Shown in pieces: positions 6,661 to 61,102 of a stretch of DNA of 64,000 nucleotides. How positions within the stretch are numbered: position 1 is the stretch's first letter; each line of letters begins with the position of its first letter. The notes below the pieces were generated by a model, which saw only the letters and a program-made list of their open reading frames with translations, had not been told where the DNA came from and searched no databases. The position numbers and the translations under genes were made by a program. The DNA lies in the IMG/VR virus record IMGVR_UViG_3300031951_000001, positions 1 to 64,000 of that record; one strand, 5' to 3'.

Positions 6661-6732
6661 ATTTTTCAAAATTACAATATATTTATCTTTCACAAACGCC
6701 CAACAACCCTTTCTTTATAGTTGGTAATATTG

Positions 6733-6780
6733 AACCCTAACATTTTTTTGAAAGAAAAACTGTTAGGGTTTTTCTTTTTT
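6733..6780 (+). terminator. Terminator-like hairpin upstream of smpB
   Basis: AACCCTAACA/TGTTAGGGTT 10-bp stem followed by a T-run. Confidence 0.7.
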
Positions 6781-6783
6781 GAT

Positions 6784-6791
6784 TATCTTTG
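6784..6791 (+). promoter_or_regulatory. Bacteroidota-type -7 promoter element TATCTTTG
   Basis: Matches TAnnTTTG, 8 nt before ATG 6799; same element precedes ATGs 7249, 13623(-), 15220, 22063(-), 24275(-), 47058(-) and 56389. Confidence 0.75.
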
Positions 6792-6798
6792 TCACATT

Positions 6799-7215
6799 AT
6801 GAAAAATTTCGAAGTAAAATTACAGAAAGTTAAGTTTGAATATGACTTCATCGAGACCTATGATGCGGGAATAGTACTTAAAGGAATTGAGGTGAAGGAA
6901 ATAAAGAAAAGGCATTTTTCGTTTATTGATGGATATTGTTATTTCAAAGACGGAGAACTTTTTGTTAAAAATGTCATAATAAATAACGCCGAAGAACCTA
7001 ACAGAGACAAAAAACTTTTGTTAAAAAAACATGAATTAACAAAATTGGAAAAAGAATTAACAAAAGGTTTGACAATGGTACCTTTCAGTTTCTTTACTAA
7101 TGATAGAGGTAGTATTAAATGTACGATAGTTTTGGGACGTAGAAACAAAAGTTACGAAAAGAAACAAAAACTAAAAGAAAAAGATTTAGAAAGAGAAAAA
7201 AAGTTGGAGGATTAA
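6799..7215 (+). CDS. smpB: SsrA-binding protein SmpB (divergent)
   Basis: YDAGIVLKGIEVK..GYCYFKDGELFV..RDKKLLLKKHEL..GLTMVP..KSYEKKQKLKEKD; true start ATG 6799. Confidence 0.85.
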   Translation: MKNFEVKLQKVKFEYDFIETYDAGIVLKGIEVKEIKKRHFSFIDGYCYFKDGELFVKNVIINNAEEPNRDKKLLLKKHELTKLEKELTKGLTMVPFSFFTNDRGSIKCTIVLGRRNKSYEKKQKLKEKDLEREKKLED

Positions 7216-15219: not shown

Positions 15220-15603
15220 ATGAAGAATTTTATAATCACAATCCTGTTTTCACTTCTCACACTAATTTCTTTTTCACAAGATACAAGATTTGGTAGAGCT
15301 TATATGTATTACACTGGTTACAATGATGGTACCGAAGTAGTATGGAATCAATACCCAACCAAGTGTGATGTACTAGTACAGATAGAACCTGCTGAAATAA
15401 ACATTTACAGCGAAATACCGCAAACGTACCACATCATTCAAATTGATGTGAGAGAAGAAAATATGGCACGATGGACCGCAGTTAATAAAGATGGTGTCCG
15501 TTGTTATGTATATATGGGAAAATATGGTGAGTCAAATGAATTGGGTCTTACCATAGAGTTTAACGATTACGCTTGGACTTACGTTGTGGTATCTACTGAT
15601 TAA
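15220..15603 (+). CDS. Secreted protein with SPI signal peptide
   Basis: MKNFIITILFSLLTLISFS|Q; TATATTTG upstream. Confidence 0.7.
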   Translation: MKNFIITILFSLLTLISFSQDTRFGRAYMYYTGYNDGTEVVWNQYPTKCDVLVQIEPAEINIYSEIPQTYHIIQIDVREENMARWTAVNKDGVRCYVYMGKYGESNELGLTIEFNDYAWTYVVVSTD

Positions 15604-16382
15604 CTTAAATGTCTTGAAAGACAAATCGCAGCTTCTCTAGCATCCTTCCAATCTTTAATAACCTTTTTACCACGTTTATTAAACGGGATAACAGATTTGA
15701 TACCATCAGAAATCATCCACTTCTTATCAAATGGGTCTGCCTTATCCAATGAATTCTGATAATCGTAATAGAATTTATCCCATTCTTGTTGAGTGTAATC
15801 ACTTCTGTTTGGTAAATAATAGTTATCGAAAACTCTGTCACCTATTTTGAACAACGCACCACTACGGTGGGTATAACCAAAATAACCCTCAACATTATCG
15901 TTTTCAATTTGCTCGGTCACAAAATGCTCATACTCATCAAGTATATAATTTTTTAATCTAATGTTTGGGGTATATGTTTTCAATTTCAAAGCAACACCGG
16001 AAGGGTATTCCTGACAAACATAAAACTTGTTGTTGTAATACCACCAACCTGTTTTAATATCACCGATATACACCCCATTACTTGACATAAATGAATTTGG
16101 AAGTTGATTTTCCCCATCTCGGGAAGTATAAGTTCCAATCTTACCACCAGTATATTTGGTAATTAACTTAATACATTCACTATTAACAATCCATCCTTCC
16201 TCATTACGATAAGGTATCATACGGCTAACTAATTTGGTAAAACCAAGATTGAGATGTATTTTATTCAATAAACCACCACTACCACCTATGTAATGTGGGT
16301 ATTTTTCAAATTTTAGCTTTATATTTCCTACGTATGGTGTGTGGTTCTTTATCATACGCAAAATATAATCAAATCTGAACAT
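15600..16382 (-). CDS. Hypothetical protein
   Basis: 260-aa ORF. Confidence 0.65.
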   Translation of the reverse strand: MFRFDYILRMIKNHTPYVGNIKLKFEKYPHYIGGSGGLLNKIHLNLGFTKLVSRMIPYRNEEGWIVNSECIKLITKYTGGKIGTYTSRDGENQLPNSFMSSNGVYIGDIKTGWWYYNNKFYVCQEYPSGVALKLKTYTPNIRLKNYILDEYEHFVTEQIENDNVEGYFGYTHRSGALFKIGDRVFDNYYLPNRSDYTQQEWDKFYYDYQNSLDKADPFDKKWMISDGIKSVIPFNKRGKKVIKDWKDAREAAICLSRHLS

Positions 16383-18562: not shown

Positions 18563-18629
18563 TTATTAGGTTTTATAGTAAATATCTTAAACAAAACGCG
18601 AGTTAAGATAGACTATAATTTTTTAGTTG

Positions 18630-18701
18630 TAGTCGGTAGGGGATTCGAACCCCTATGACAAGAATGAAAATCTTGTATCCTAACCCTTAGATGAACCGAC
18701 C
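18630..18701 (-). tRNA. trnE: tRNA-Glu(TTC)
   Basis: Cloverleaf: GGTCGGT/ACCGACT acceptor, CAAGA-TTTTCAT-TCTTG anticodon arm, AGGGG-TTCGAAT-CCCCT T arm; CCA not encoded. Confidence 0.92.
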
Positions 18702-50555: not shown

Positions 50556-51334
50556 TTGATACCATATATTTTTTCACTTACATTTGTTCAAATGAAAATA
50601 CAATTAAACCCTTTCTCGCAAGTATTGTTGAGTGAATCTCACAAAGAAATTGTTTTGTTACCCTCACCCCAATTACATTATTACGATAAAGTAATGGGGA
50701 AAAACGATTGGACTATCGTCTTATCTATTAAGTTTATTATATGGGAAGTAGGATTGGCTATGGTTAAACCTGCGGAAATTATTAATACCAATAAAAATCA
50801 AGAACTGTAATGAGTAAAATATTAAGTAATTTTAAGAACATACATTTCTTGTGGTTAGTAGGTGTAATTTGTTTTTTGTCATTCTACATTCCTGTTGCTT
50901 GTTTTACAACATATTCAGATTATGTTCCCGAATGGACTCTACCGATATTTGTTTTTTCAACCATGATTCCACTTTGGTTTCATGAGTTTTTATGGAGGAC
51001 CGCTCAAATAGGGTCGGCTTCATATTTGGGGTTTCATGAGTTACATTTTGAGGATAGAAAATGGAAAAAGAAAACTTGTAATCCATTTTACTTTTTGTTT
51101 CACTATTTTTGGTGGTTAAGAAGAAAACCAATATTTTGGTTAATGACTTTAGCAATTATCGGGAGTCTTATTTACGGATATGTTGCTCCCTACGATGAGG
51201 ATGGGATTCACCCATTCACTCCTTTCCACGGTATAAATGCTATTTGGTGGCTTGGAATTATAAAAGATTTTGTTATATTTAGAAACGACGCTAAAGAAGG
51301 ATTAATTAGACATTATAGACACAATTACGAATGA
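50556..51334 (+). CDS. Hypothetical protein (about 50592..50810) and polytopic membrane protein (50810..51334)
   Basis: TACATTTG upstream; several TM helices. Confidence 0.6.
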
Positions 51335-53145
51335 AACATTTAATTTTATTACTATCAATTTTACTATCGTCTCTAACTTCATTTTCACAATGTGGTGGAG
51401 CTCTTACATTTGATTTAAGTACCCCACCAGCCGCTGACGGAACATACCCCCCCAACACAACCATAGAACTTTGTGTTACAATGACCGGATGGAATGGTAA
51501 TGCCCAAGGGTCTAATTGGATGGAAGGTTTCGGATTAACATTGGGAGCGGGATGGGTAGTTGTGAATCCAACACTTCCTCCTGACGATGCTGACGCAGAT
51601 GCAAGCGGAACTTGGTTATGGATGAATACTGTAACTTCTGATGCCACAGGTTTGGTGGCAGGTCCTGGTTATTTCTTTGAAGGTCCGACAGGCCCAACAG
51701 ATGGTAACCCCGGTAATGACTGGGGTGACTATTGTATGAATGGAGATTGTGTTTGGACTTTCTGTGTCGAACTTACTTCATCGGGTAATAGTGGTGACCC
51801 TTTAAATATTGAGGTACAAAACTTTTCTGATGGTACTATGGGGAGTTGGGGTAATGCCGATTGTGTAGGTCAAGACCCACCTGTTAGTATTTTTATTGGA
51901 GAGGTTGGATGTAACACATATGGATGTACAAACGCTGCGGCTTGTAACTATGATGCCAACGCGGCTTGTGATGATGGTAGTTGTATTTTACCAGGTTGTA
52001 CCGACCCACTTGCCTGTAACTTTGATTTAAACGCACCCTGTGATGACGGTAGTTGTACTTATGGTGGATGTACCGACCCAATTGCCTGTAACTTCAATCC
52101 ACTTGCGGGATGTGATGACGGAACTTGTAACTATTTCAGTATGGGGGACATAACCCATAATTTTATCCCATGTCCTGACACAACTTGTACTGGTTCAGAG
52201 GTAATGTATTCAGTTACAGGAAATATTACTTCCACATATGATTGGCAAGTTTCAGGTGGAGGACTTGTAACTACTGACCTCACAAAAGATTGTGAAATTA
52301 TTTGGGGGGACATTCCTGGAACATATACAATTACGGTACAAGAAACTACGGAGGAAGGATGTGTCGGAGTAATTAAAACTTGTGAAGTTGAACTTATCAT
52401 ACCCGATATTATATTCAATCATAACTCATTTTCAATGTGCTTAAATTCGTCGGATGAGATTATACCGTTTCCGCAAGGTGGAAGTTGGTCTTCAGAGTTT
52501 ATGAATGGAAACACATTTGTTGGAACCAAACCTGGAACATATCATCCATCCTACCTTACTAATATTCACGGATGTGACATCCAAGAAGAAGTTGAGGTTG
52601 TTGTTAAAAGAAAATACGAAGCTCCAAATATTATTTATAGTGCCGAGTTAATTGACCTTTGTTTTGATTCGGGAGTTCAAACATATATTGCTGAAGATAC
52701 AGTTGGTGTAACATACGGATGGTTTATCGACGAAGTTAAACAATTATCGAACGAAAATAATATGACAATCGAATGGTATGATACTACACGAACTTATATT
52801 GTTAAGGTGATTGCTTACGACGAGATTGGTTGTGAAAGTGAACCAAAATTAATATCCGTAAAAACCGAATCCTGTCAGAGATTTTTCGCACCAAACTCAT
52901 TTACGCCTAATGGTGATGGAACAAACGACATTTTTGAAGTCAGAGGATTGTCAGTTTATAGACCAATGATGAGAGTATTCAATAGGTGGGGTGTGGTAGT
53001 TTATGAATCATCAAATCTTTGGTGGACTGGTGATAGTGGAAGTGGTTACTATTGTGACAATGGAATCTATAATTGGATAATTGAATATAAAGATAAATTC
53101 GGACAGAATAAACAAGAGTCCGGTTATGTAACACTTATTAGGTAA
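51331..53145 (+). CDS. Secreted Cys-rich repeat protein with T9SS type-B (gliding-motility-associated, CHU_C-like) C-terminal domain
   Basis: Signal peptide SFS|Q; three GCT(N/D)..ACN..A.CDDG(S/T)C repeats; FAPNSFTPNGDGTNDIF..FNRWG..GYVTLIR. Confidence 0.88.
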   Translation: MKHLILLLSILLSSLTSFSQCGGALTFDLSTPPAADGTYPPNTTIELCVTMTGWNGNAQGSNWMEGFGLTLGAGWVVVNPTLPPDDADADASGTWLWMNTVTSDATGLVAGPGYFFEGPTGPTDGNPGNDWGDYCMNGDCVWTFCVELTSSGNSGDPLNIEVQNFSDGTMGSWGNADCVGQDPPVSIFIGEVGCNTYGCTNAAACNYDANAACDDGSCILPGCTDPLACNFDLNAPCDDGSCTYGGCTDPIACNFNPLAGCDDGTCNYFSMGDITHNFIPCPDTTCTGSEVMYSVTGNITSTYDWQVSGGGLVTTDLTKDCEIIWGDIPGTYTITVQETTEEGCVGVIKTCEVELIIPDIIFNHNSFSMCLNSSDEIIPFPQGGSWSSEFMNGNTFVGTKPGTYHPSYLTNIHGCDIQEEVEVVVKRKYEAPNIIYSAELIDLCFDSGVQTYIAEDTVGVTYGWFIDEVKQLSNENNMTIEWYDTTRTYIVKVIAYDEIGCESEPKLISVKTESCQRFFAPNSFTPNGDGTNDIFEVRGLSVYRPMMRVFNRWGVVVYESSNLWWTGDSGSGYYCDNGIYNWIIEYKDKFGQNKQESGYVTLIR

Positions 53146-57090: not shown

Positions 57091-58179
57091 ATGTTATCAG
57101 ATAAAATTAAAAATATAATATTCGAATATCTTTTAGATGAAATCTATAAAGTTGAGATAATCTATTATCGCGACAGTGTATGGTTTATTGACAGAGAGAA
57201 TCGGTATTGGTATTTTGAATATCACAAAGTGGACAAACACCTTTGGTGGAGATGGTCTCATTTTACCACGGCTCTAACAATGTTTTCAATGGAGGCTGAA
57301 AAGGAACAGTATTTATTAGGTGAACTGGTTAATATGATTTTAACCAAGAAACAAAAACTTGAATCAAAGTATCCAAACAAGATATTCAAGACCGTTGGAA
57401 GTGTTATGAATTTTGGGGATAAGGTGGACGAGGTATTAAATAGCGAGGTAGAAACAACTCTTCATCGAAGGTTAGACCGTCGTTATCAGGTGGATGAGGT
57501 CCTAAATAACGAGGTAGAAACAACTGATGGTTATGGATGGAAACCAAGATTTGTGGTGGATGAGGTATTAAATAACGAGATAGAAACAACGGAAATGCAT
57601 CTCACCCCAAGGCAGTGGAAGGTGGACGATGTATTAAATAACGAGGTGGAAACAACATCCGGGTCTGACATAGCAATATCGCAAGGGTTGGGTGAGGTCC
57701 TAAATAACGAGGCGAAAACAACCGACAAAGTAGGTTCTCAATTCTGCGTAGAGGCGGATGCTGTCATAACTTTTGAGGTTGAAAAAACTAGTCATGGGAC
57801 ACTGATTGATGAAGATAAAATAATAGATGAGGTATTATCAGTTGACATTGAAACAATTGGATATTCAAAAACGCATAGGCTTCGTCCTGTAACAGGAGCA
57901 CTTGATTACAATGATAATCCGATTGAAATAAAATCAATTAGAAAATTAAAAGGTGAAAGTCCCCTCCAAGATGTTATCGTCAGTCAAATTCTTGATGAAT
58001 CAGATAAGGTGACCGACAAGCTCAAGATTAAAGAGGATGATTATGTTAAAACATATAGTCACGATGTTTATATGTGTGACCACCTTGTTCAGAATGTTTT
58101 AGATGTTGGTGTTAATTCAATACATTATGATGCTGAATCACACACTCCACTTATTGACGGAATACTAAAAAAGGCTTAA
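57091..58179 (+). CDS. Paralogue-family domain followed by 22-aa repeats (12 conserved + 10 variable residues)
   Basis: VDEVLNNEVETT repeated; N-terminal domain aligns with the 33856..34179 protein. Confidence 0.8.
   Translation: MLSDKIKNIIFEYLLDEIYKVEIIYYRDSVWFIDRENRYWYFEYHKVDKHLWWRWSHFTTALTMFSMEAEKEQYLLGELVNMILTKKQKLESKYPNKIFKTVGSVMNFGDKVDEVLNSEVETTLHRRLDRRYQVDEVLNNEVETTDGYGWKPRFVVDEVLNNEIETTEMHLTPRQWKVDDVLNNEVETTSGSDIAISQGLGEVLNNEAKTTDKVGSQFCVEADAVITFEVEKTSHGTLIDEDKIIDEVLSVDIETIGYSKTHRLRPVTGALDYNDNPIEIKSIRKLKGESPLQDVIVSQILDESDKVTDKLKIKEDDYVKTYSHDVYMCDHLVQNVLDVGVNSIHYDAESHTPLIDGILKKA
57423..57857 (+). repeat. In-frame CRISPR-like array: 36-nt repeats with 30-nt unrelated spacers
   Basis: Repeats start at 57423, 57489, 57555, 57621 and 57687, with degenerate copies at 57753 and 57822; consensus GGTGGATGAGGTATTAAATAACGAGGTAGAAACAAC. 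Confidence 0.9.
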
Positions 58180-58188
58180 ATTTGTAAA

Positions 58189-59805
58189 ATGAAAGATATT
58201 AACGACCTTCACCAAGAACTTGATGATTTGACTTACCTTAACGCAAAGATGAGAGATGAGGGATTTGATTATTGTTTCCGTCATTATTCATCATTTGAAG
58301 AAATTAAGGATGAGAAGTTTCACGAACTCAGGTTGAAGTACATTCAAATTGCCGAGGAACTTGAGAACTATGTGAACACTCAATATGAATTGAAACAAGA
58401 CGAAATTGATAACTACGAAGAAAAAGATGAAAATTAATATGAATATAACTCGGCATTTTTTTTATGTCTTGTTAACGGTTTTTATTTTATCTGGTTGTGG
58501 AGAATCAGTCAATGAAAAAAACTTTGATATAAGTATGCAGAAAATAAATGGTGAATGGATACGCGAATCACATTCATTACCTGAAGACGCAGATTTTTTC
58601 ATTGACACTTTCAATGGCAGTTATTCATTACGATATATTAGAGGTGAAGGTAATTGTTTTTCCAAAAGAGAGAAACTTGTGAGAAACGGGATTATTGATT
58701 ATAGGATTAATAACTAATAATTACGAATATGAAAATAACATTTGGCGACCTCAAAACAGGGGACAGAATTAAGACAAGATACTCAGGTATGGCAACGGTA
58801 GTTGAAACTGGTTGTTATAAAGGAACAATGGTTAAACTGAAATGTGATACCCCAAAGTGGTGCTGTCCTTATTTTTATGAACACGAATTAGAATTAATAT
58901 GAATAATACAGAAATAACACCGGTACCTGAAATCACCGCCGACACCACAAGAGTATGTGAAATCAGATTTGATTGTTTGGTTACAATGCATGATGTGGGA
59001 TATAGAAAATATGAAGGGATGTGGGGTCAGGAGAAACAATCAAAGACACCACAATGGTTCAGAGCGAATCATAAAATAACACTTGAAAGCGTTAAACACG
59101 CTGACCCATATGAACTTGGGATGAGAATAAAACAAATGTTTCACGAATTAGAAAATACAATTAAAAAATATGAAAACGGAACAACCTATCAAAGTCATGA
59201 ATAAAGAACAACAACAGATTATTGATGAGGTGTATGAGAGATATTGGAGTAGTATTGAAACTTCAGAATATGATGGGATTGGTCCTACATCAATTAAGTT
59301 ACCAACACTAATGAAAGAAGAGTTCATCAACAAATGTAAAACAGACCCAGAGTTCTCTGAAAAGTGGGGGTTGAAGATTTATACCAAAGTAGATGGTGAT
59401 AAGGTTTGGATGGGAATGGTTTATAATGATAATGCTGTTGAAATTAGATTAAAATAGAAAGTTATGAATGAAATACGTAGGCTAATTAAAAAAATTGAAT
59501 ACACACATTATATAGAGTATAAGGGAAAACAATATACTAGAAAAGAAGTTATTATACCAAAGGCTTTTTCTTGGGAAGGTACACCTGATAAACTTGAGGA
59601 TATACATACTATTTCGTGGCAAGATTATGATTATGAGGTTTATCAAAATAATGGAAATATTCATTATTTTAGTTGTGACCACGGATGGGCTAAAAATGGC
59701 GTGATGGATAAATCAAATCCTGTGCCTAAAATAGAAAAATGTTTCAAAAAAACTATTGGTAAAGATTTAATATATTTCAACGAAACAATAGAAAGTTATG
59801 AGTAA
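58189..59805 (+). CDS. Run of hypothetical proteins (58189..58437, lipoprotein 58427..58717, 58899..59204, 59170..59457, 59464..59805)
   Basis: Coupled ORFs; lipobox LSG|C in the second. Confidence 0.6.
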
Positions 59806-61102
59806 AATACAAGTAACACAACCAACATTTCTAATCAATTTAGATAATCCGACAGAAGTTAGTTATGTGCCAATGGAAGGTAATTGGAAATCAATTATAG
59901 TTGAAACATATCAACATGGGTTTCCTGAAATACAAGATGATGAAATTCTTTATGTCTATAAAGAAAATAGAGGTTATATTAAAAAACAAGTTATGACTAA
60001 TACATTAGACAAACAATACCAAGACCTACTCCAAACAATTTTGGATTTTGGTTGTACGAAGAGTGACAGGACTGGAACTGGAACCAAATCAATTTTTGGT
60101 TACACCATCCGTCATAATATGAAAAACGGATTCCCACTTCTTACAACAAAGAAGATGGCGTTTAAAACAATGGTAACCGAGTTGTTATGGTTCTTGAGAG
60201 GTGATACTAACATCAAATACCTTGTTGACAATAATTGTCATATCTGGGACGGAGACGCTTTCAAAAACTACATCAGTAAAACTAATGAATTCAAAGGTGA
60301 TTGGCCGGACACAATGGAAGAATTCATCAACAAAATAAAAACGGATGATGGGTTTGCTAAAAAATATGGGGAATTGGGTTCCATCTATGGGAAACAATGG
60401 AGAAGATGGACTAAAAAGAAAATGTATCTATCAACAGATGGTTCATATGAAAACATTTATGATGAGGCAGACCAAACAGTTATAGACCAAATAGCAATCC
60501 TCATTAACGAACTCAAAACAAACCCAGACTCAAGACGACTAATGGTTTCAGCTTGGAATGTAGGTGAATTAGACCAAATGGTTCTTCCACCTTGTCATTA
60601 TGGATTTCAAGTTTATACAAGAGAGTTGAGTTATGATGAAAAAAGAAACATTTATAATTCAGACCCAATGAGTTATGGAGGTACAGCGTCTCCATTACCA
60701 CCAAATTCTGAAGAAATTAAATTTGACCCCCATCACGCAGAGAAAGATTGGGACAATAATTACGCAAGTAAAAAGATTCCAACCAGAGCAATCTCATTAA
60801 TGTGGAATCAACGTTCCGTCGACACATTATTGGGGCTCCCATTCAATATAGCATCATACGGATTACTATTAACAATAATTGCCAAAGAAGTTAATATGGT
60901 ACCTGATGAATTGATTGGAAATTTGGGTGATACCCATTTATACCTCAACCATATTGAACAAGCAAAAGAACAGATTGGTAGAGAACCATTTGAATTACCA
61001 AATTTAGTAATAGAACATAGTAGTTTAGAGCCGGTTGAATTGGTTTATAAGTTAGAAAACTATCAATCACATCCAGCAATTAAGGCACCACTATCCAACT
61101 AA
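59798..61102 (+). CDS. thyA: Thymidylate synthase with N-terminal extension and insertions
   Basis: DRTGTGT, FPLLTTKK, ELLWFLRG, LPPCH, QRSVD and PFNIASY; core could start at ATG 59993. Confidence 0.95.
   Translation: MSKIQVTQPTFLINLDNPTEVSYVPMEGNWKSIIVETYQHGFPEIQDDEILYVYKENRGYIKKQVMTNTLDKQYQDLLQTILDFGCTKSDRTGTGTKSIFGYTIRHNMKNGFPLLTTKKMAFKTMVTELLWFLRGDTNIKYLVDNNCHIWDGDAFKNYISKTNEFKGDWPDTMEEFINKIKTDDGFAKKYGELGSIYGKQWRRWTKKKMYLSTDGSYENIYDEADQTVIDQIAILINELKTNPDSRRLMVSAWNVGELDQMVLPPCHYGFQVYTRELSYDEKRNIYNSDPMSYGGTASPLPPNSEEIKFDPHHAEKDWDNNYASKKIPTRAISLMWNQRSVDTLLGLPFNIASYGLLLTIIAKEVNMVPDELIGNLGDTHLYLNHIEQAKEQIGREPFELPNLVIEHSSLEPVELVYKLENYQSHPAIKAPLSN

What the first reader, a model, noticed from the sequence alone, without database searches (positions are those of the whole stretch)
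57423..57857. CRISPR-like 36+30-nt repeat-spacer array that is translated in frame: a hypervariable peptide display array
Seen: repeats of exactly 36 nt alternate with five spacers of exactly 30 nt and then one of 33 nt. Repeats 1-4 differ from consensus by 2, 2, 1 and 3 nt, repeat 5 by 7, and 6-7 are degenerate, so decay is polar. Spacers share no similarity and are GC-richer than the surrounding DNA. The 66-nt unit keeps frame: VDEVLNNEVETT plus LHRRLDRRYQ, DGYGWKPRFV, EMHLTPRQWK, SGSDIAISQG, DKVGSQFCVE. Five of the eight changes in repeats 1-4 are synonymous and two more are conservative, implying selection on protein. Established: 36/30 geometry is typical of type II and VI-B arrays, and Bacteroidota Cas13b repeats end in CAAC, as these do (GAAACAAC). 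Against a true CRISPR: no cas genes, no repeat hairpin, non-identical repeats. Spacer codons vary at all three positions, unlike AAY-templated DGR variation. Inference: an undescribed mechanism inserts or randomises fixed-length 10-codon segments between constant scaffolds, creating a peptide library, or a captured array was domesticated into coding sequence.
Basis: partly seen in the sequence, partly recalled or inferred. Interest (0 to 1): 0.9.

Follow-up and report, generated by a model that had tools for sequence, protein, structure and literature searches.

The report
Hypervariable peptide-cassette array in a jumbo-phage protein
The CRISPR-looking 36+30-nt array is the translated middle of a jumbo-phage protein: a constant 12-residue motif alternates with interchangeable 10-residue cassettes that related phages swap by recombination, which is an unusual natural peptide library and not a CRISPR.

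Summary
Seven 36-nt repeats sit at a 66-nt period (57424-57858), inside a 362-aa ORF (57091-58179, +) of a ~322-kb freshwater jumbo phage with a likely Bacteroidota host.

It is not a CRISPR array:
- the repeats are not identical and have no hairpin or Rfam match;
- there are no cas genes in 64 kb;
- I found no protospacers and no polar acquisition;
- the reading frame is open only in the coding frame.

It is a coding tandem array of 22-codon units, a 12-aa acidic motif (VDEVLNxEVETT) plus a 10-aa cassette. At least 228 homologues keep this exact period and differ in length by 22-aa steps.

The cassettes fall into about 150 unrelated families (Chao1 ~290). Their composition is near random and no position is conserved. 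Each family recurs almost unchanged in many phages, under weak purifying selection.

Arrays turn over fast. Proteins with N-domains at least 99% identical share only about half their cassettes. Shared cassettes are about 5-fold less diverged at synonymous sites than the same gene's N-domain. Divergence rises stepwise through the flanking repeats, which marks crossovers inside the repeats.

No insertion or randomising mechanism is supported. Function is unknown; a disordered, multivalent conflict protein is my inference. Assembly chimeras are a caveat.

The parts
57091..58179 (+). Complete gene, 362 aa: N-terminal domain, cassette array, C-terminal region. It starts 1 nt after the upstream ORF ends, and the next ORF starts 10 nt after its stop.
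   Evidence: ORF list and translation. 228 homologues at E<=1e-3, with lengths stepping by 22 aa. No Pfam or PHROG family.
57091..57423 (+). N-terminal folded domain (residues 1-111), rich in Trp, Tyr and Phe. It is the family's defining constant part.
   Evidence: AlphaFold2 pLDDT 64-88 in 10-residue blocks over residues 1-110 (nine of eleven blocks 73-88), with a helix, four strands and helices. 160 clusters at 50% identity in 1.84 billion representatives. No annotated structural match.
57424..57459 (+). Repeat 1 (VDEVLNSEVETT)
57460..57489 (+). Cassette 1, LHRRLDRRYQ
   Evidence: The family is seen in 3 proteins. In IMG/VR it matches only the same phage's array.
57490..57525 (+). Repeat 2 (VDEVLNNEVETT)
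57526..57555 (+). Cassette 2, DGYGWKPRFV
   Evidence: The family has 25 occurrences and 6 point variants. Only self hits in IMG/VR.
57556..57591 (+). Repeat 3 (VDEVLNNEIETT)
57592..57621 (+). Cassette 3, EMHLTPRQWK
   Evidence: The family has 5 occurrences. Only self hits in IMG/VR.
57622..57657 (+). Repeat 4 (VDDVLNNEVETT)
57658..57687 (+). Cassette 4, SGSDIAISQG
   Evidence: The family has 16 occurrences and 8 variants. Only self hits in IMG/VR.
57688..57723 (+). Repeat 5 (LGEVLNNEAKTT), 8 nt from consensus
57724..57753 (+). Cassette 5, DKVGSQFCVE. In homologues it lies at or near the 3' end of the exchangeable part.
   Evidence: Only self hits in IMG/VR.
57754..57858 (+). Degenerate repeats 6 (57754-57789) and 7 (57823-57858), with the 33-nt cassette 6 (SHGTLIDEDKI) between them. 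These are fixed 3' edge units.
   Evidence: The terminal units are position-specific in homologues.
57859..58179 (+). C-terminal conserved region (residues 257-362). It holds three further degenerate motif copies at 57973-58014, 58081-58122 and 58150-58176. The last two are separated by a further 9-10-residue segment, and the protein ends in half a motif (IDGILKKA).
   Evidence: Located by string search. Conserved columns in alignment A1. Low AlphaFold2 confidence. Reading these stretches as motif copies is my own inspection.

Best explanation
What it is. The feature is the central region of a protein-coding gene of a ~322-kb jumbo phage from freshwater metagenomes. The host is probably a member of Bacteroidota. 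The region is a tandem array of 22-codon units. Each unit has a conserved, acidic 12-residue motif (consensus VDEVLNxEVETT, 36 nt) followed by a 10-residue cassette (30 nt). The 36+30 geometry is 12+10 codons, and the likeness to CRISPR is coincidental.

What is shown.
- The cassettes form a population-wide pool of discrete, mutually unrelated peptides.
- Each cassette is kept nearly unchanged, under weak purifying selection, in many related phages.
- Arrays differ in which cassettes they hold, in how many, and occasionally in order.
- The changes arise by homologous recombination or gene conversion, with crossovers inside the conserved 36-nt repeats, between co-circulating relatives. Modules are swapped, gained and lost much faster than the flanking domains accumulate substitutions.

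What is inferred.
- The protein is a folded N-terminal domain carrying a long, acidic, intrinsically disordered and multivalent tail.
- In that tail the constant motif is the scaffold or anchoring element and the cassettes supply variable specificity.
- The locus is under diversity-favouring selection in a phage-host or phage-phage conflict, for example as binders or decoys of variable partners.

What is unresolved. The origin of new cassette families is unknown.
For: Coding:
- 0 stops in frame against 3-19 in the other frames. Fifty random codons of spacer composition stay open only about 5% of the time.
- 228 homologues, with lengths in 22-aa steps.
- The period is exactly 22 aa in 489 of 535 unit steps. 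It is kept in relatives whose N-domain is 35-50% identical: 34 of 50 long representatives keep it.

Discrete pool:
- 648 cassette instances fall into 145-152 families, with a Chao1 estimate of ~290. Hamming distances are bimodal.
- Every cassette position has ~4.1 bits of entropy (3.6 at position 10) and there is no hydrophobic pattern. Composition correlates r=0.73 with uniform random codons.
- No similarity between families at nucleotide level, in any register or on either strand.

Selection on the peptide:
- pN/pS is 0.31 (0-2 aa differences) and 0.47 (3-5 aa differences).
- The same family occurs twice in one array in only 2 of 131 proteins.

Recombination:
- Shared cassettes show synonymous differences at 4-6% of codons where the same gene pair's N-domain shows 24-34%.
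- Around shared cassettes with unrelated neighbours, divergence rises from 5% in the cassette to 8% in the near third of each repeat and 18-25% in the far third. The far value equals the baseline for random repeat pairs.
- The N-domain, C-terminus and downstream DNA give discordant similarities.

Turnover:
- Pairs with N-domains at least 99% identical share 49% of cassettes, and about 10% have identical arrays.

Disorder:
- pLDDT is 23-33 across the array against 64-88 in the N-domain. The array has pI 4.2.

Context:
- The gene lies among small accessory ORFs between RNA ligase, glycosyltransferase and epimerase genes and ThyA. This order is kept in relatives.
- Tad6 anti-defence homologues occur in the window and beside the RNA ligase gene in a relative.
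Against: - The function has no direct evidence. There is no family, structure or annotated homologue.
- Low pLDDT could partly reflect an alignment scrambled by the shuffled cassettes rather than true disorder.
- The homologue arrays come from short-read metagenome assemblies. Contigs end inside the array in 14 of 40 loci. Some apparent reshuffling and some repeat mosaicism could therefore be chimeric assembly of co-occurring strains.
- Against that caveat, the window's array is 100% identical in five independent assemblies, and several arrays recur in different data sources.
- The pN/pS values are conditioned on recognisable similarity, which biases pN downward.
- Order is mostly collinear. 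Only 22 of 333 co-occurring family pairs are seen in both orders. Much of the variation is therefore presence or absence of units rather than free shuffling.
- A strict 10-residue length with no sequence constraint is not explained by a purely disordered linker model.
Confidence: 0.7

Rival explanations
1. The cassettes are functionless fixed-length linkers. Only the repeated 12-residue motif matters, as a multivalent short linear motif that must recur every 22 residues. Cassette diversity would then be drift plus recombination.
For: No cassette position is conserved and the composition is near random. The motif and the exact period are conserved through deep divergence. The array is predicted to be unstructured.
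Against: pN/pS is 0.3-0.5 rather than ~1. Cassettes persist nearly unchanged across genes whose flanks have diverged. Tandem duplicates of a cassette, the commonest product of unequal crossing-over, are almost absent at 2 of 131 arrays. That points to selection for distinct cassettes within an array.
Confidence: 0.2
2. The protein is a polyprotein or multi-core precursor, analogous to cyanobactin PatE or to fungal and neuropeptide precursors. The constant motifs would be protease or enzyme recognition sequences, and the 10-residue cassettes would be released as a mixture of peptides.
For: Conserved flanks around hypervariable cores of fixed length, with several cores per precursor. This is the architecture described for cyanobactin precursors (PMC4663559, PMC2854353). 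The array is unstructured.
Against: No protease, macrocyclase or other peptide-modifying enzyme appears among the 42 ORFs of at least 150 aa or the ten small ORFs flanking the gene. No modifiable residue is conserved in the cores. Large conserved N- and C-terminal regions are unusual for a precursor. There is no sequence similarity to known recognition sequences.
Confidence: 0.08
3. The array is a structured 22-residue solenoid, LRR-like as in the FNIP/FGxxFN repeats of Cafeteria roenbergensis virus Crov588. The cassettes would form variable surface loops of a binding protein.
For: A profile of the family hits Crov588 (PDB 6nyr) at E=4.9e-9 with the same 22-residue period, aligning DEVLN to ENVLP (structure described in PMC9525666). 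A strict unit length is typical of solenoids.
Against: Each aligned stretch is individually weak, with independent E-values of 0.03-23, so the score comes from periodic resonance. The part of the FNIP repeat that forms the Phe spine and Asn ladder aligns to the cassette, which here has no conserved or hydrophobic position. There is no Pfam LRR or FNIP hit even at E<=10. AlphaFold2 predicts no regular structure.
Confidence: 0.1
4. The array is a CRISPR-derived or CRISPR-mimicking RNA element. It could be a domesticated array, a phage mini-array, or an RNA anti-CRISPR decoy for a 36/30 system such as type VI-B or II-C, acting at RNA level.
For: The geometry is exactly 36+30 nt and the repeat ends in CAAC. 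Some repeat codons (GAG, GAA, ACA at codons 8, 10 and 11) are almost fixed synonymously. The likely Bacteroidota host belongs to a phylum where such systems occur (own knowledge).
Against: The repeats differ by 2-12 nt. There is no hairpin: z-scores are positive and shuffles fold as well or better. No Rfam family matches, including the CRISPR-DR families. No cas gene was found in 64 kb. I found no protospacers in the window, the related loci, INPHARED or IMG/VR. No array of this repeat occurs in 185,579 reference genomes. Rare cassettes are not polar. The frame is kept open in all homologues. Comparable synonymous fixation occurs at 19% of N-domain codons.
Confidence: 0.03
5. The hypervariation is produced by a dedicated mutagenic or insertional mechanism, such as a DGR-like retroelement, silent-cassette gene conversion, or an unknown 30-nt writer.
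For: The cassettes have a random-like composition and are GC-richer than the genome at all codon positions. Their length is strictly fixed. Many families are singletons: 74 of 152.
Against: No reverse transcriptase or recombinase was found in the window. There is no second copy of the repeat or a donor array in the window or in the complete 322-kb genome. The same cassettes recur across phages and diverge by ordinary point mutation. The same array is identical in five samples. Variation is not restricted to adenine-templated codons.
Confidence: 0.04

Closest known systems
Hypervariable coding minisatellites (tandem-repeat proteins reshuffled by recombination), e.g. the S. aureus protein A X-region, streptococcal M and Alp proteins, and Anaplasma MSP1a (own knowledge)
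   Same: In-frame tandem units. Copy number varies in whole units between close relatives. Units are reassorted by recombination within the conserved parts. The edge units are degenerate.
   Different: In those proteins the unit variants are point-mutated versions of one another. Here half of every unit is a cassette with no detectable similarity to the other ~150 families, of strictly fixed length and random-like composition. The element is also in a phage accessory gene rather than a bacterial surface protein.
Multi-core RiPP precursors with hypervariable cassettes (cyanobactin PatE type; PMC4663559, PMC2854353)
   Same: Conserved recognition-like flanks alternate with short hypervariable cores of fixed length. 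There are several cores per protein and the cores are swapped between relatives.
   Different: No processing or modifying enzymes were found nearby. No residue is conserved in the cores. The N- and C-terminal regions are large and conserved. There is no sequence similarity and no evidence of cleavage.
CRISPR arrays with 36-nt repeats and 30-nt spacers (types II-C and VI-B; own knowledge)
   Same: The DNA geometry is 36+30 nt. The unique 'spacers' are shared and reassorted among relatives. The 3'-most repeats are degenerate.
   Different: This array is translated. The repeats are not identical and have no structure. There are no cas genes, no protospacers and no polar growth. Selection acts on the peptide.
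False CRISPRs: tandem repeats in protein-coding genes that array finders mistake for CRISPR (Zhang and Ye 2017, PMC5294841)
   Same: A repeat-spacer pattern inside an ORF with no cas context.
   Different: Most such cases are ordinary domain repeats. This one has truly unrelated cassettes of fixed length and rapid modular turnover.
FNIP/FGxxFN 22-residue leucine-rich repeats of giant viruses (Crov588, PDB 6nyr; PMC9525666)
   Same: A 22-residue period and an E-x-V-L-(N/P) segment. Both are viral, with many repeats.
   Different: The core-forming half of the FNIP repeat corresponds to the unconstrained cassette here. There is no Pfam hit and no predicted solenoid.

Membership tests
CRISPR array | Near-identical direct repeats | tested here: not met
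   The copies differ from consensus by 2, 2, 2, 4, 8, 11 and 12 of 36 nt. 121 distinct repeat sequences occur among the related genes.
CRISPR array | Repeat with a conserved RNA structure or a match to a known CRISPR-DR family | tested here: not met
   MFE is 0 to -3.8 kcal/mol and no better than shuffles on either strand. There is no Rfam match at E<=10.
CRISPR array | Associated cas genes | tested here: not met
   Pfam scans covered the 42 ORFs of at least 150 aa in the 64-kb window and the ten small ORFs beside the gene. No Cas domain was found. The rest of the 322-kb genome was not scanned.
CRISPR array | Spacers derived from foreign DNA (protospacers) | tested here: not met
   97 spacers were compared with the window and all fetched loci, and only 11-14-nt chance matches appeared. 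The array against INPHARED gave E>=0.4 only. The 22-nt cores of the five window spacers hit only the same phage's own array in IMG/VR. Host genomes and metagenomes were not searched for spacers.
CRISPR array | Non-coding transcript and polar (leader-end) acquisition | tested here: not met
   The frame is open only in the coding frame. Rare cassettes make up 10-13% of units in the first four position quintiles and 2% in the last. Both ends hold the commonest cassettes.
Diversity-generating retroelement target | Reverse transcriptase plus a template repeat, with adenine-specific variation | tested here: not met
   No RT domain was found in the window. No second copy of the repeat occurs in the window or in the complete genome contig. 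All three codon positions vary.
Silent-cassette gene conversion systems (vls or pilS type) | Archive of unexpressed donor cassettes in the same genome | tested here: not met
   The repeat motif occurs in one array only, both in the window and in the 322-kb contig IMGVR_UViG_3300031951_000001.
Leucine-rich repeat / FNIP repeat | Conserved hydrophobic core and Asn ladder in every unit, forming a solenoid fold | tested here: not met
   Cassette positions have 3.6-4.2 bits of entropy and no hydrophobic pattern. There is no Pfam LRR or FNIP hit. No regular structure is predicted. The only support is a weak periodic profile hit to Crov588.
Multi-core RiPP precursor (cyanobactin-like) | Hypervariable cores flanked by conserved recognition sequences | tested here: inconclusive
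   The architecture is analogous. There is no sequence similarity to known recognition sequences, and cleavage is untested.
Multi-core RiPP precursor (cyanobactin-like) | Adjacent protease, macrocyclase or modifying enzymes | tested here: not met
   None were found among the window ORFs scanned or in the syntenic relatives' called genes.
Coding minisatellite / variable tandem-repeat protein | In-frame tandem units with copy number varying by whole units among relatives | tested here: met
   Homologue lengths cluster around 292, 317, 340, 362, 383, 405, 426, 447 and 468 aa. 489 of 535 unit steps are exactly 22 aa.
Coding minisatellite / variable tandem-repeat protein | Rearrangement by recombination within the conserved part of the unit | tested here: met
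   There is a divergence gradient across the repeats flanking shared cassettes. Cassettes are younger than the flanks. The caveat is that short-read assemblies could mimic part of this signal.

The most novel reading that the evidence does not exclude
Jumbo phages of freshwater Bacteroidota maintain a population-wide combinatorial peptide library. Hundreds of unrelated 10-residue cassettes of non-homologous (de novo or captured) origin are displayed between constant acidic motifs on a dedicated scaffold protein. They are continually reassorted under frequency-dependent selection as variable binders or decoys in phage-host or phage-phage conflict. This would be a protein-level counterpart of an immune or antigenic repertoire that needs no DGR, and it might have an as yet unseen way of creating new fixed-length cassettes.
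Probability: 0.2. Interest if true: 0.85.

Novelty: new variant of a known kind. Interest (0 to 1): 0.6.

Why it matters
If the pattern survives long-read validation, it is a widespread kind of targeted protein hypervariation in large phages. The N-domain family has 160 clusters at 50% identity. The variation works by reassorting discrete peptide modules and not by mutagenesis. It would add a third route to phage hypervariability, beside DGRs and tail-fibre mosaicism.

It would also point to an unknown conflict interface in jumbo phages of Bacteroidota. It offers a natural scaffold for displaying arbitrary 10-mers. Finally, it is a clean cautionary example for CRISPR array finders, because exact 36/30 geometry can be 12+10 codons.

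Tried and rejected
- Tandem Repeats Finder missed the array because the units are too divergent.
- Rfam and per-repeat folding gave nothing.
- tblastn and blastn against cultured-phage genomes found no relative and no protospacer.
- Pfam and PHROGs give no family for the protein.
- Foldseek against PDB and BFVD found no annotated fold, only uncharacterised homologues from uncultured phages.
- The PDB profile hit to the Crov588 LRR was examined and judged to be periodic resonance.
- The genome-contig scan used a pattern that was too degenerate. It returned 99 hits against ~140 expected by chance (my own arithmetic), and no 66-nt-spaced array.
- I tested whether cassette families are related by frameshift or reverse complement. 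No pair reached 80% identity over 18 nt or more, the same as for shuffled cassettes.
- I tested whether the fixed synonymous codons in the repeat indicate an RNA or DNA signal. The result is not distinguishable from the N-domain background.
- I did not run a second structure prediction, because a shallow or scrambled alignment would not have been more informative.
Full report
**1. The observation**

The region 57419-57858 contains seven copies of a ~36-41-nt unit with start-to-start spacing of 66, 66, 66, 66, 66 and 69 nt. In register these are 36-nt repeats at 57424, 57490, 57556, 57622, 57688, 57754 and 57823, with five 30-nt spacers and one 33-nt spacer. A degenerate version of the repeat matches five times in the 64-kb window, all inside the array, against 0.01 expected from shuffles.

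The copies differ from their consensus by 2, 2, 2, 4, 8, 11 and 12 nt, so decay toward the 3' end is real. Spacers 1-5 have 47% GC, against 33% for the rest of the gene and the window.

**2. The array is coding**

The array lies inside ORF 57091-58179 (+), 362 aa. Over the array the reading frame has no stop codon, while the other five frames have 3-19 stops. Fifty random codons with the spacers' composition remain open only about 5% of the time. In repeats 1-4, seven changed codons are synonymous and three are conservative replacements.

The window is part of a ~322-kb jumbo phage genome (IMGVR_UViG_3300031951_000001). It has 33% GC. It carries a T4-type RNA ligase, thymidylate synthase, DNA methylases, SmpB, a tRNA and a protein with a CHU_C type IX secretion sorting domain, which points to a Bacteroidota host. 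The gene sits in a run of same-strand small ORFs between the RNA ligase, glycosyltransferase and epimerase genes and ThyA. This arrangement is kept in relatives.

**3. Tests of the CRISPR reading**

- No repeat folds better than its shuffles on either strand.
- No Rfam family, including the CRISPR-DR families, matches at E<=10.
- No Cas, reverse transcriptase, recombinase or protease domain appears in any of the 42 ORFs of at least 150 aa or in the ten small ORFs beside the gene.
- The 22-nt cores of all five window spacers hit only the same phage's own array in 2.9 million IMG/VR contigs.
- 97 spacers from related genes give only 11-14-nt chance matches to the window and to all fetched loci.
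- blastn against cultured-phage genomes gives nothing below E=0.4.
- A degenerate repeat pattern found only scattered single hits in 185,579 reference genomes. By my own arithmetic about 140 were expected by chance and 99 were seen. None formed an array.
- The CAAC ending is the codons Glu-Thr-Thr.

CRISPR membership fails on every defining feature that I tested.

**4. The family**

The protein has 228 homologues at E<=1e-3. None is named and none has a Pfam domain. Their lengths fall into classes 22 aa apart, from 292 to 519 aa. All share a Trp/Tyr-rich N-terminal domain of ~110 aa and a conserved C-terminal region. Between them is a variable number of units made of a 12-residue motif (VDEVLNxEVETT or VEEVLNHEVETT) and a 10-residue cassette.

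The step between motif starts is exactly 22 residues in 489 of 535 cases. Relatives with only 30-50% identity in the N-domain keep the same design, for example VEGILNxxVxxT plus 10 residues. Among 50 long representatives of 160 clusters found with the N-domain alone, 34 have at least two exact 22-residue steps. By my own inspection, the C-terminal region of the window protein contains three more degenerate motif copies, and the protein ends in half a motif.

**5. The cassettes**

I counted 648 cassette instances in 131 non-identical proteins, and they form 145-152 families. Pairwise Hamming distances are bimodal: 4 or fewer within families, and 7-10 between families as expected for unrelated 10-mers. 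There is a thin bridge at distances 5-6.

74 families are singletons and the Chao1 estimate is about 290. Every cassette position has about 4.1 bits of entropy, 3.6 at position 10, with no hydrophobic pattern. The amino-acid composition correlates better with uniform random codons (r=0.73) than with AT-rich random codons (0.35) or with the N-domain (0.25). Cassette GC is 42% against 32% in the flanks, and it is raised at all three codon positions. Different families show no nucleotide similarity in any register or on either strand.

Each family nevertheless recurs in many proteins with few changes. For example, the window's second cassette family has 25 occurrences and six point variants. Within families, pN/pS is 0.31 for 0-2 aa differences and 0.47 for 3-5 aa differences. 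This is purifying selection, although the estimate is biased downward because families are defined by similarity.

**6. How arrays differ**

104 distinct arrays occur among the 131 proteins. Pairs whose 85-residue N-domain core is at least 99% identical share on average 49% of their cassettes, and only about 10% of such pairs have identical arrays. Sharing falls to about 5% at 70-80% identity.

Order is mostly collinear. 22 of 333 family pairs that co-occur at least twice appear in both orders, and some cassettes are tied to the first or last positions. Rare cassettes are spread over the first four position quintiles (10-13%) and are scarce in the last (2%), so there is no CRISPR-like polarity. 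The same family occurs twice in one array in only 2 of 131 proteins.

**7. Mechanism of turnover**

I obtained DNA for about 30 related genes.

- Shared cassettes carry synonymous differences at 4-6% of codons in gene pairs whose N-domains differ synonymously at 24-34% of codons. The adjoining repeats are intermediate.
- For shared cassettes with unrelated neighbours on both sides, divergence is 5% in the cassette, 8% in the nearest third of each flanking repeat, 15-18% in the middle third and 18-25% in the far third. The far value equals the baseline for random repeat pairs.
- Where a neighbouring cassette is also shared, the repeat between the two cassettes stays at 3-5%.
- The N-domain, the C-terminus and the downstream DNA give discordant similarities between the same genomes.

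Together these are the marks of homologous recombination or gene conversion with crossovers inside the 36-nt repeats. It moves a cassette together with the adjoining parts of its repeats between co-circulating phages. No donor archive exists in the same genome: there is one array in the window and one in the complete 322-kb contig.

There is a caveat. These are short-read assemblies, and 14 of 40 loci end inside the array, so some mosaics may be chimeric. Against that, the window's locus is 100% identical over 7-13 kb in five independent assemblies, and several arrays recur in different sources.

**8. Structure**

AlphaFold2 with a 32-sequence alignment gives pLDDT of 64-88 in 10-residue blocks over residues 1-110, with nine of the eleven blocks at 73-88, and predicts a helix, four strands and helices. 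It gives pLDDT 23-33 with no secondary structure across the array, and low confidence for the C-terminal region. Foldseek finds no annotated fold. The array is strongly acidic, with pI 4.2.

A profile of the family hits Crov588, a 22-residue FNIP/FGxxFN leucine-rich repeat protein of a giant virus, at E=4.9e-9 (PMC9525666). However, each aligned stretch is individually weak. The half of the FNIP repeat that builds the Phe spine and Asn ladder aligns to the unconstrained cassette. Pfam LRR and FNIP models do not match. I therefore treat this hit as a resonance of period and not as membership.

**9. Interpretation**

Shown:
- a translated tandem array of 12+10-codon units;
- a discrete pool of cassettes shared across the population;
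- weak purifying selection on the cassettes;
- fast modular turnover;
- recombination within the repeats.

Inferred:
- a folded N-domain carrying a disordered, multivalent acidic tail;
- constant motifs that act as scaffold or anchor, and cassettes that provide variable specificity;
- selection for diversity in a conflict setting. The accessory-gene neighbourhood fits this. Tad6 anti-defence homologues occur in the window and beside the RNA ligase gene in a relative.

Unresolved:
- how unrelated cassettes of exactly 10 residues originate;
- why the length is so strict when the sequence is so free.

The rivals are functionless linkers, a cleaved multi-core precursor, an LRR-like solenoid, an RNA-level CRISPR mimic and a dedicated writer. 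I score them at 0.2, 0.08, 0.1, 0.03 and 0.04.

**10. Novelty**

The nearest known kinds are hypervariable coding minisatellites of bacterial surface proteins, multi-core RiPP precursors with hypervariable cassettes (PMC4663559, PMC2854353) and false CRISPRs in coding repeats (PMC5294841). None combines unrelated fixed-length cassettes, constant motifs, population-wide reassortment and a phage accessory gene. My literature searches did not find a description of this family. I rate it a new variant of a known kind, with interest 0.6.

Noticed in passing
window 6721-7215 (+): A phage-encoded SmpB homologue (Pfam SmpB, E=1.6e-32). ARAGORN found no tmRNA gene in the window, only tRNA-Glu at 18629-18701.
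   Followed up: no
window 15600-16382 (-); also the contig of P0002: A Tad6 (type I Thoeris inhibitor) family hit at E=1.9e-13. A Tad6-family gene also sits directly upstream of the RNA ligase gene in a relative's contig, so anti-defence genes lie in this accessory region.
   Followed up: partly
window 51331-53145 (+): A 604-aa protein with a C-terminal CHU_C type IX secretion sorting domain (E=2.2e-16). This is a marker of Bacteroidota and suggests the host phylum.
   Followed up: no
window 59798-61102 (+): The thymidylate synthase is 434 aa, with an N-terminal extension of ~70 aa. The Pfam match is split into two stretches, which suggests an insertion within the domain. Relatives have 367-374 aa.
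   Followed up: no
repeats at 57424-57723 and in loci L005-L047: Codons 8, 10 and 11 of the repeat (GAG, GAA, ACA) and the NNC form of the variable codon 7 are almost fixed synonymously across 121 distinct repeats, against the gene's own codon bias. Codons 1, 2, 4, 6, 9 and 12 vary freely. This is compatible with concerted evolution, but it is not explained.
   Followed up: partly
loci L008, L024-L027, L029-L037: 14 of 40 fetched contigs end inside the array. Assemblers break there, which hints at co-existing variants within a sample and warns about chimeric assemblies.
   Followed up: partly
loci L010, L041-L047 compared with window 57091-58420: The N-domain, the C-terminal region and the downstream gene give discordant similarities between the same genome pairs, for example 83%, 93% and 97%. 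The array therefore separates segments with different histories.
   Followed up: partly
protein P0123 (233 aa): A distant relative carries the N-terminal domain twice in tandem, each copy followed by one or two motif units.
   Followed up: no
window 57404-57589 and 57531-57728 (-): Two antisense ORFs of 61 and 65 aa overlap the array. They are probably a by-product of the purine-rich coding strand.
   Followed up: no
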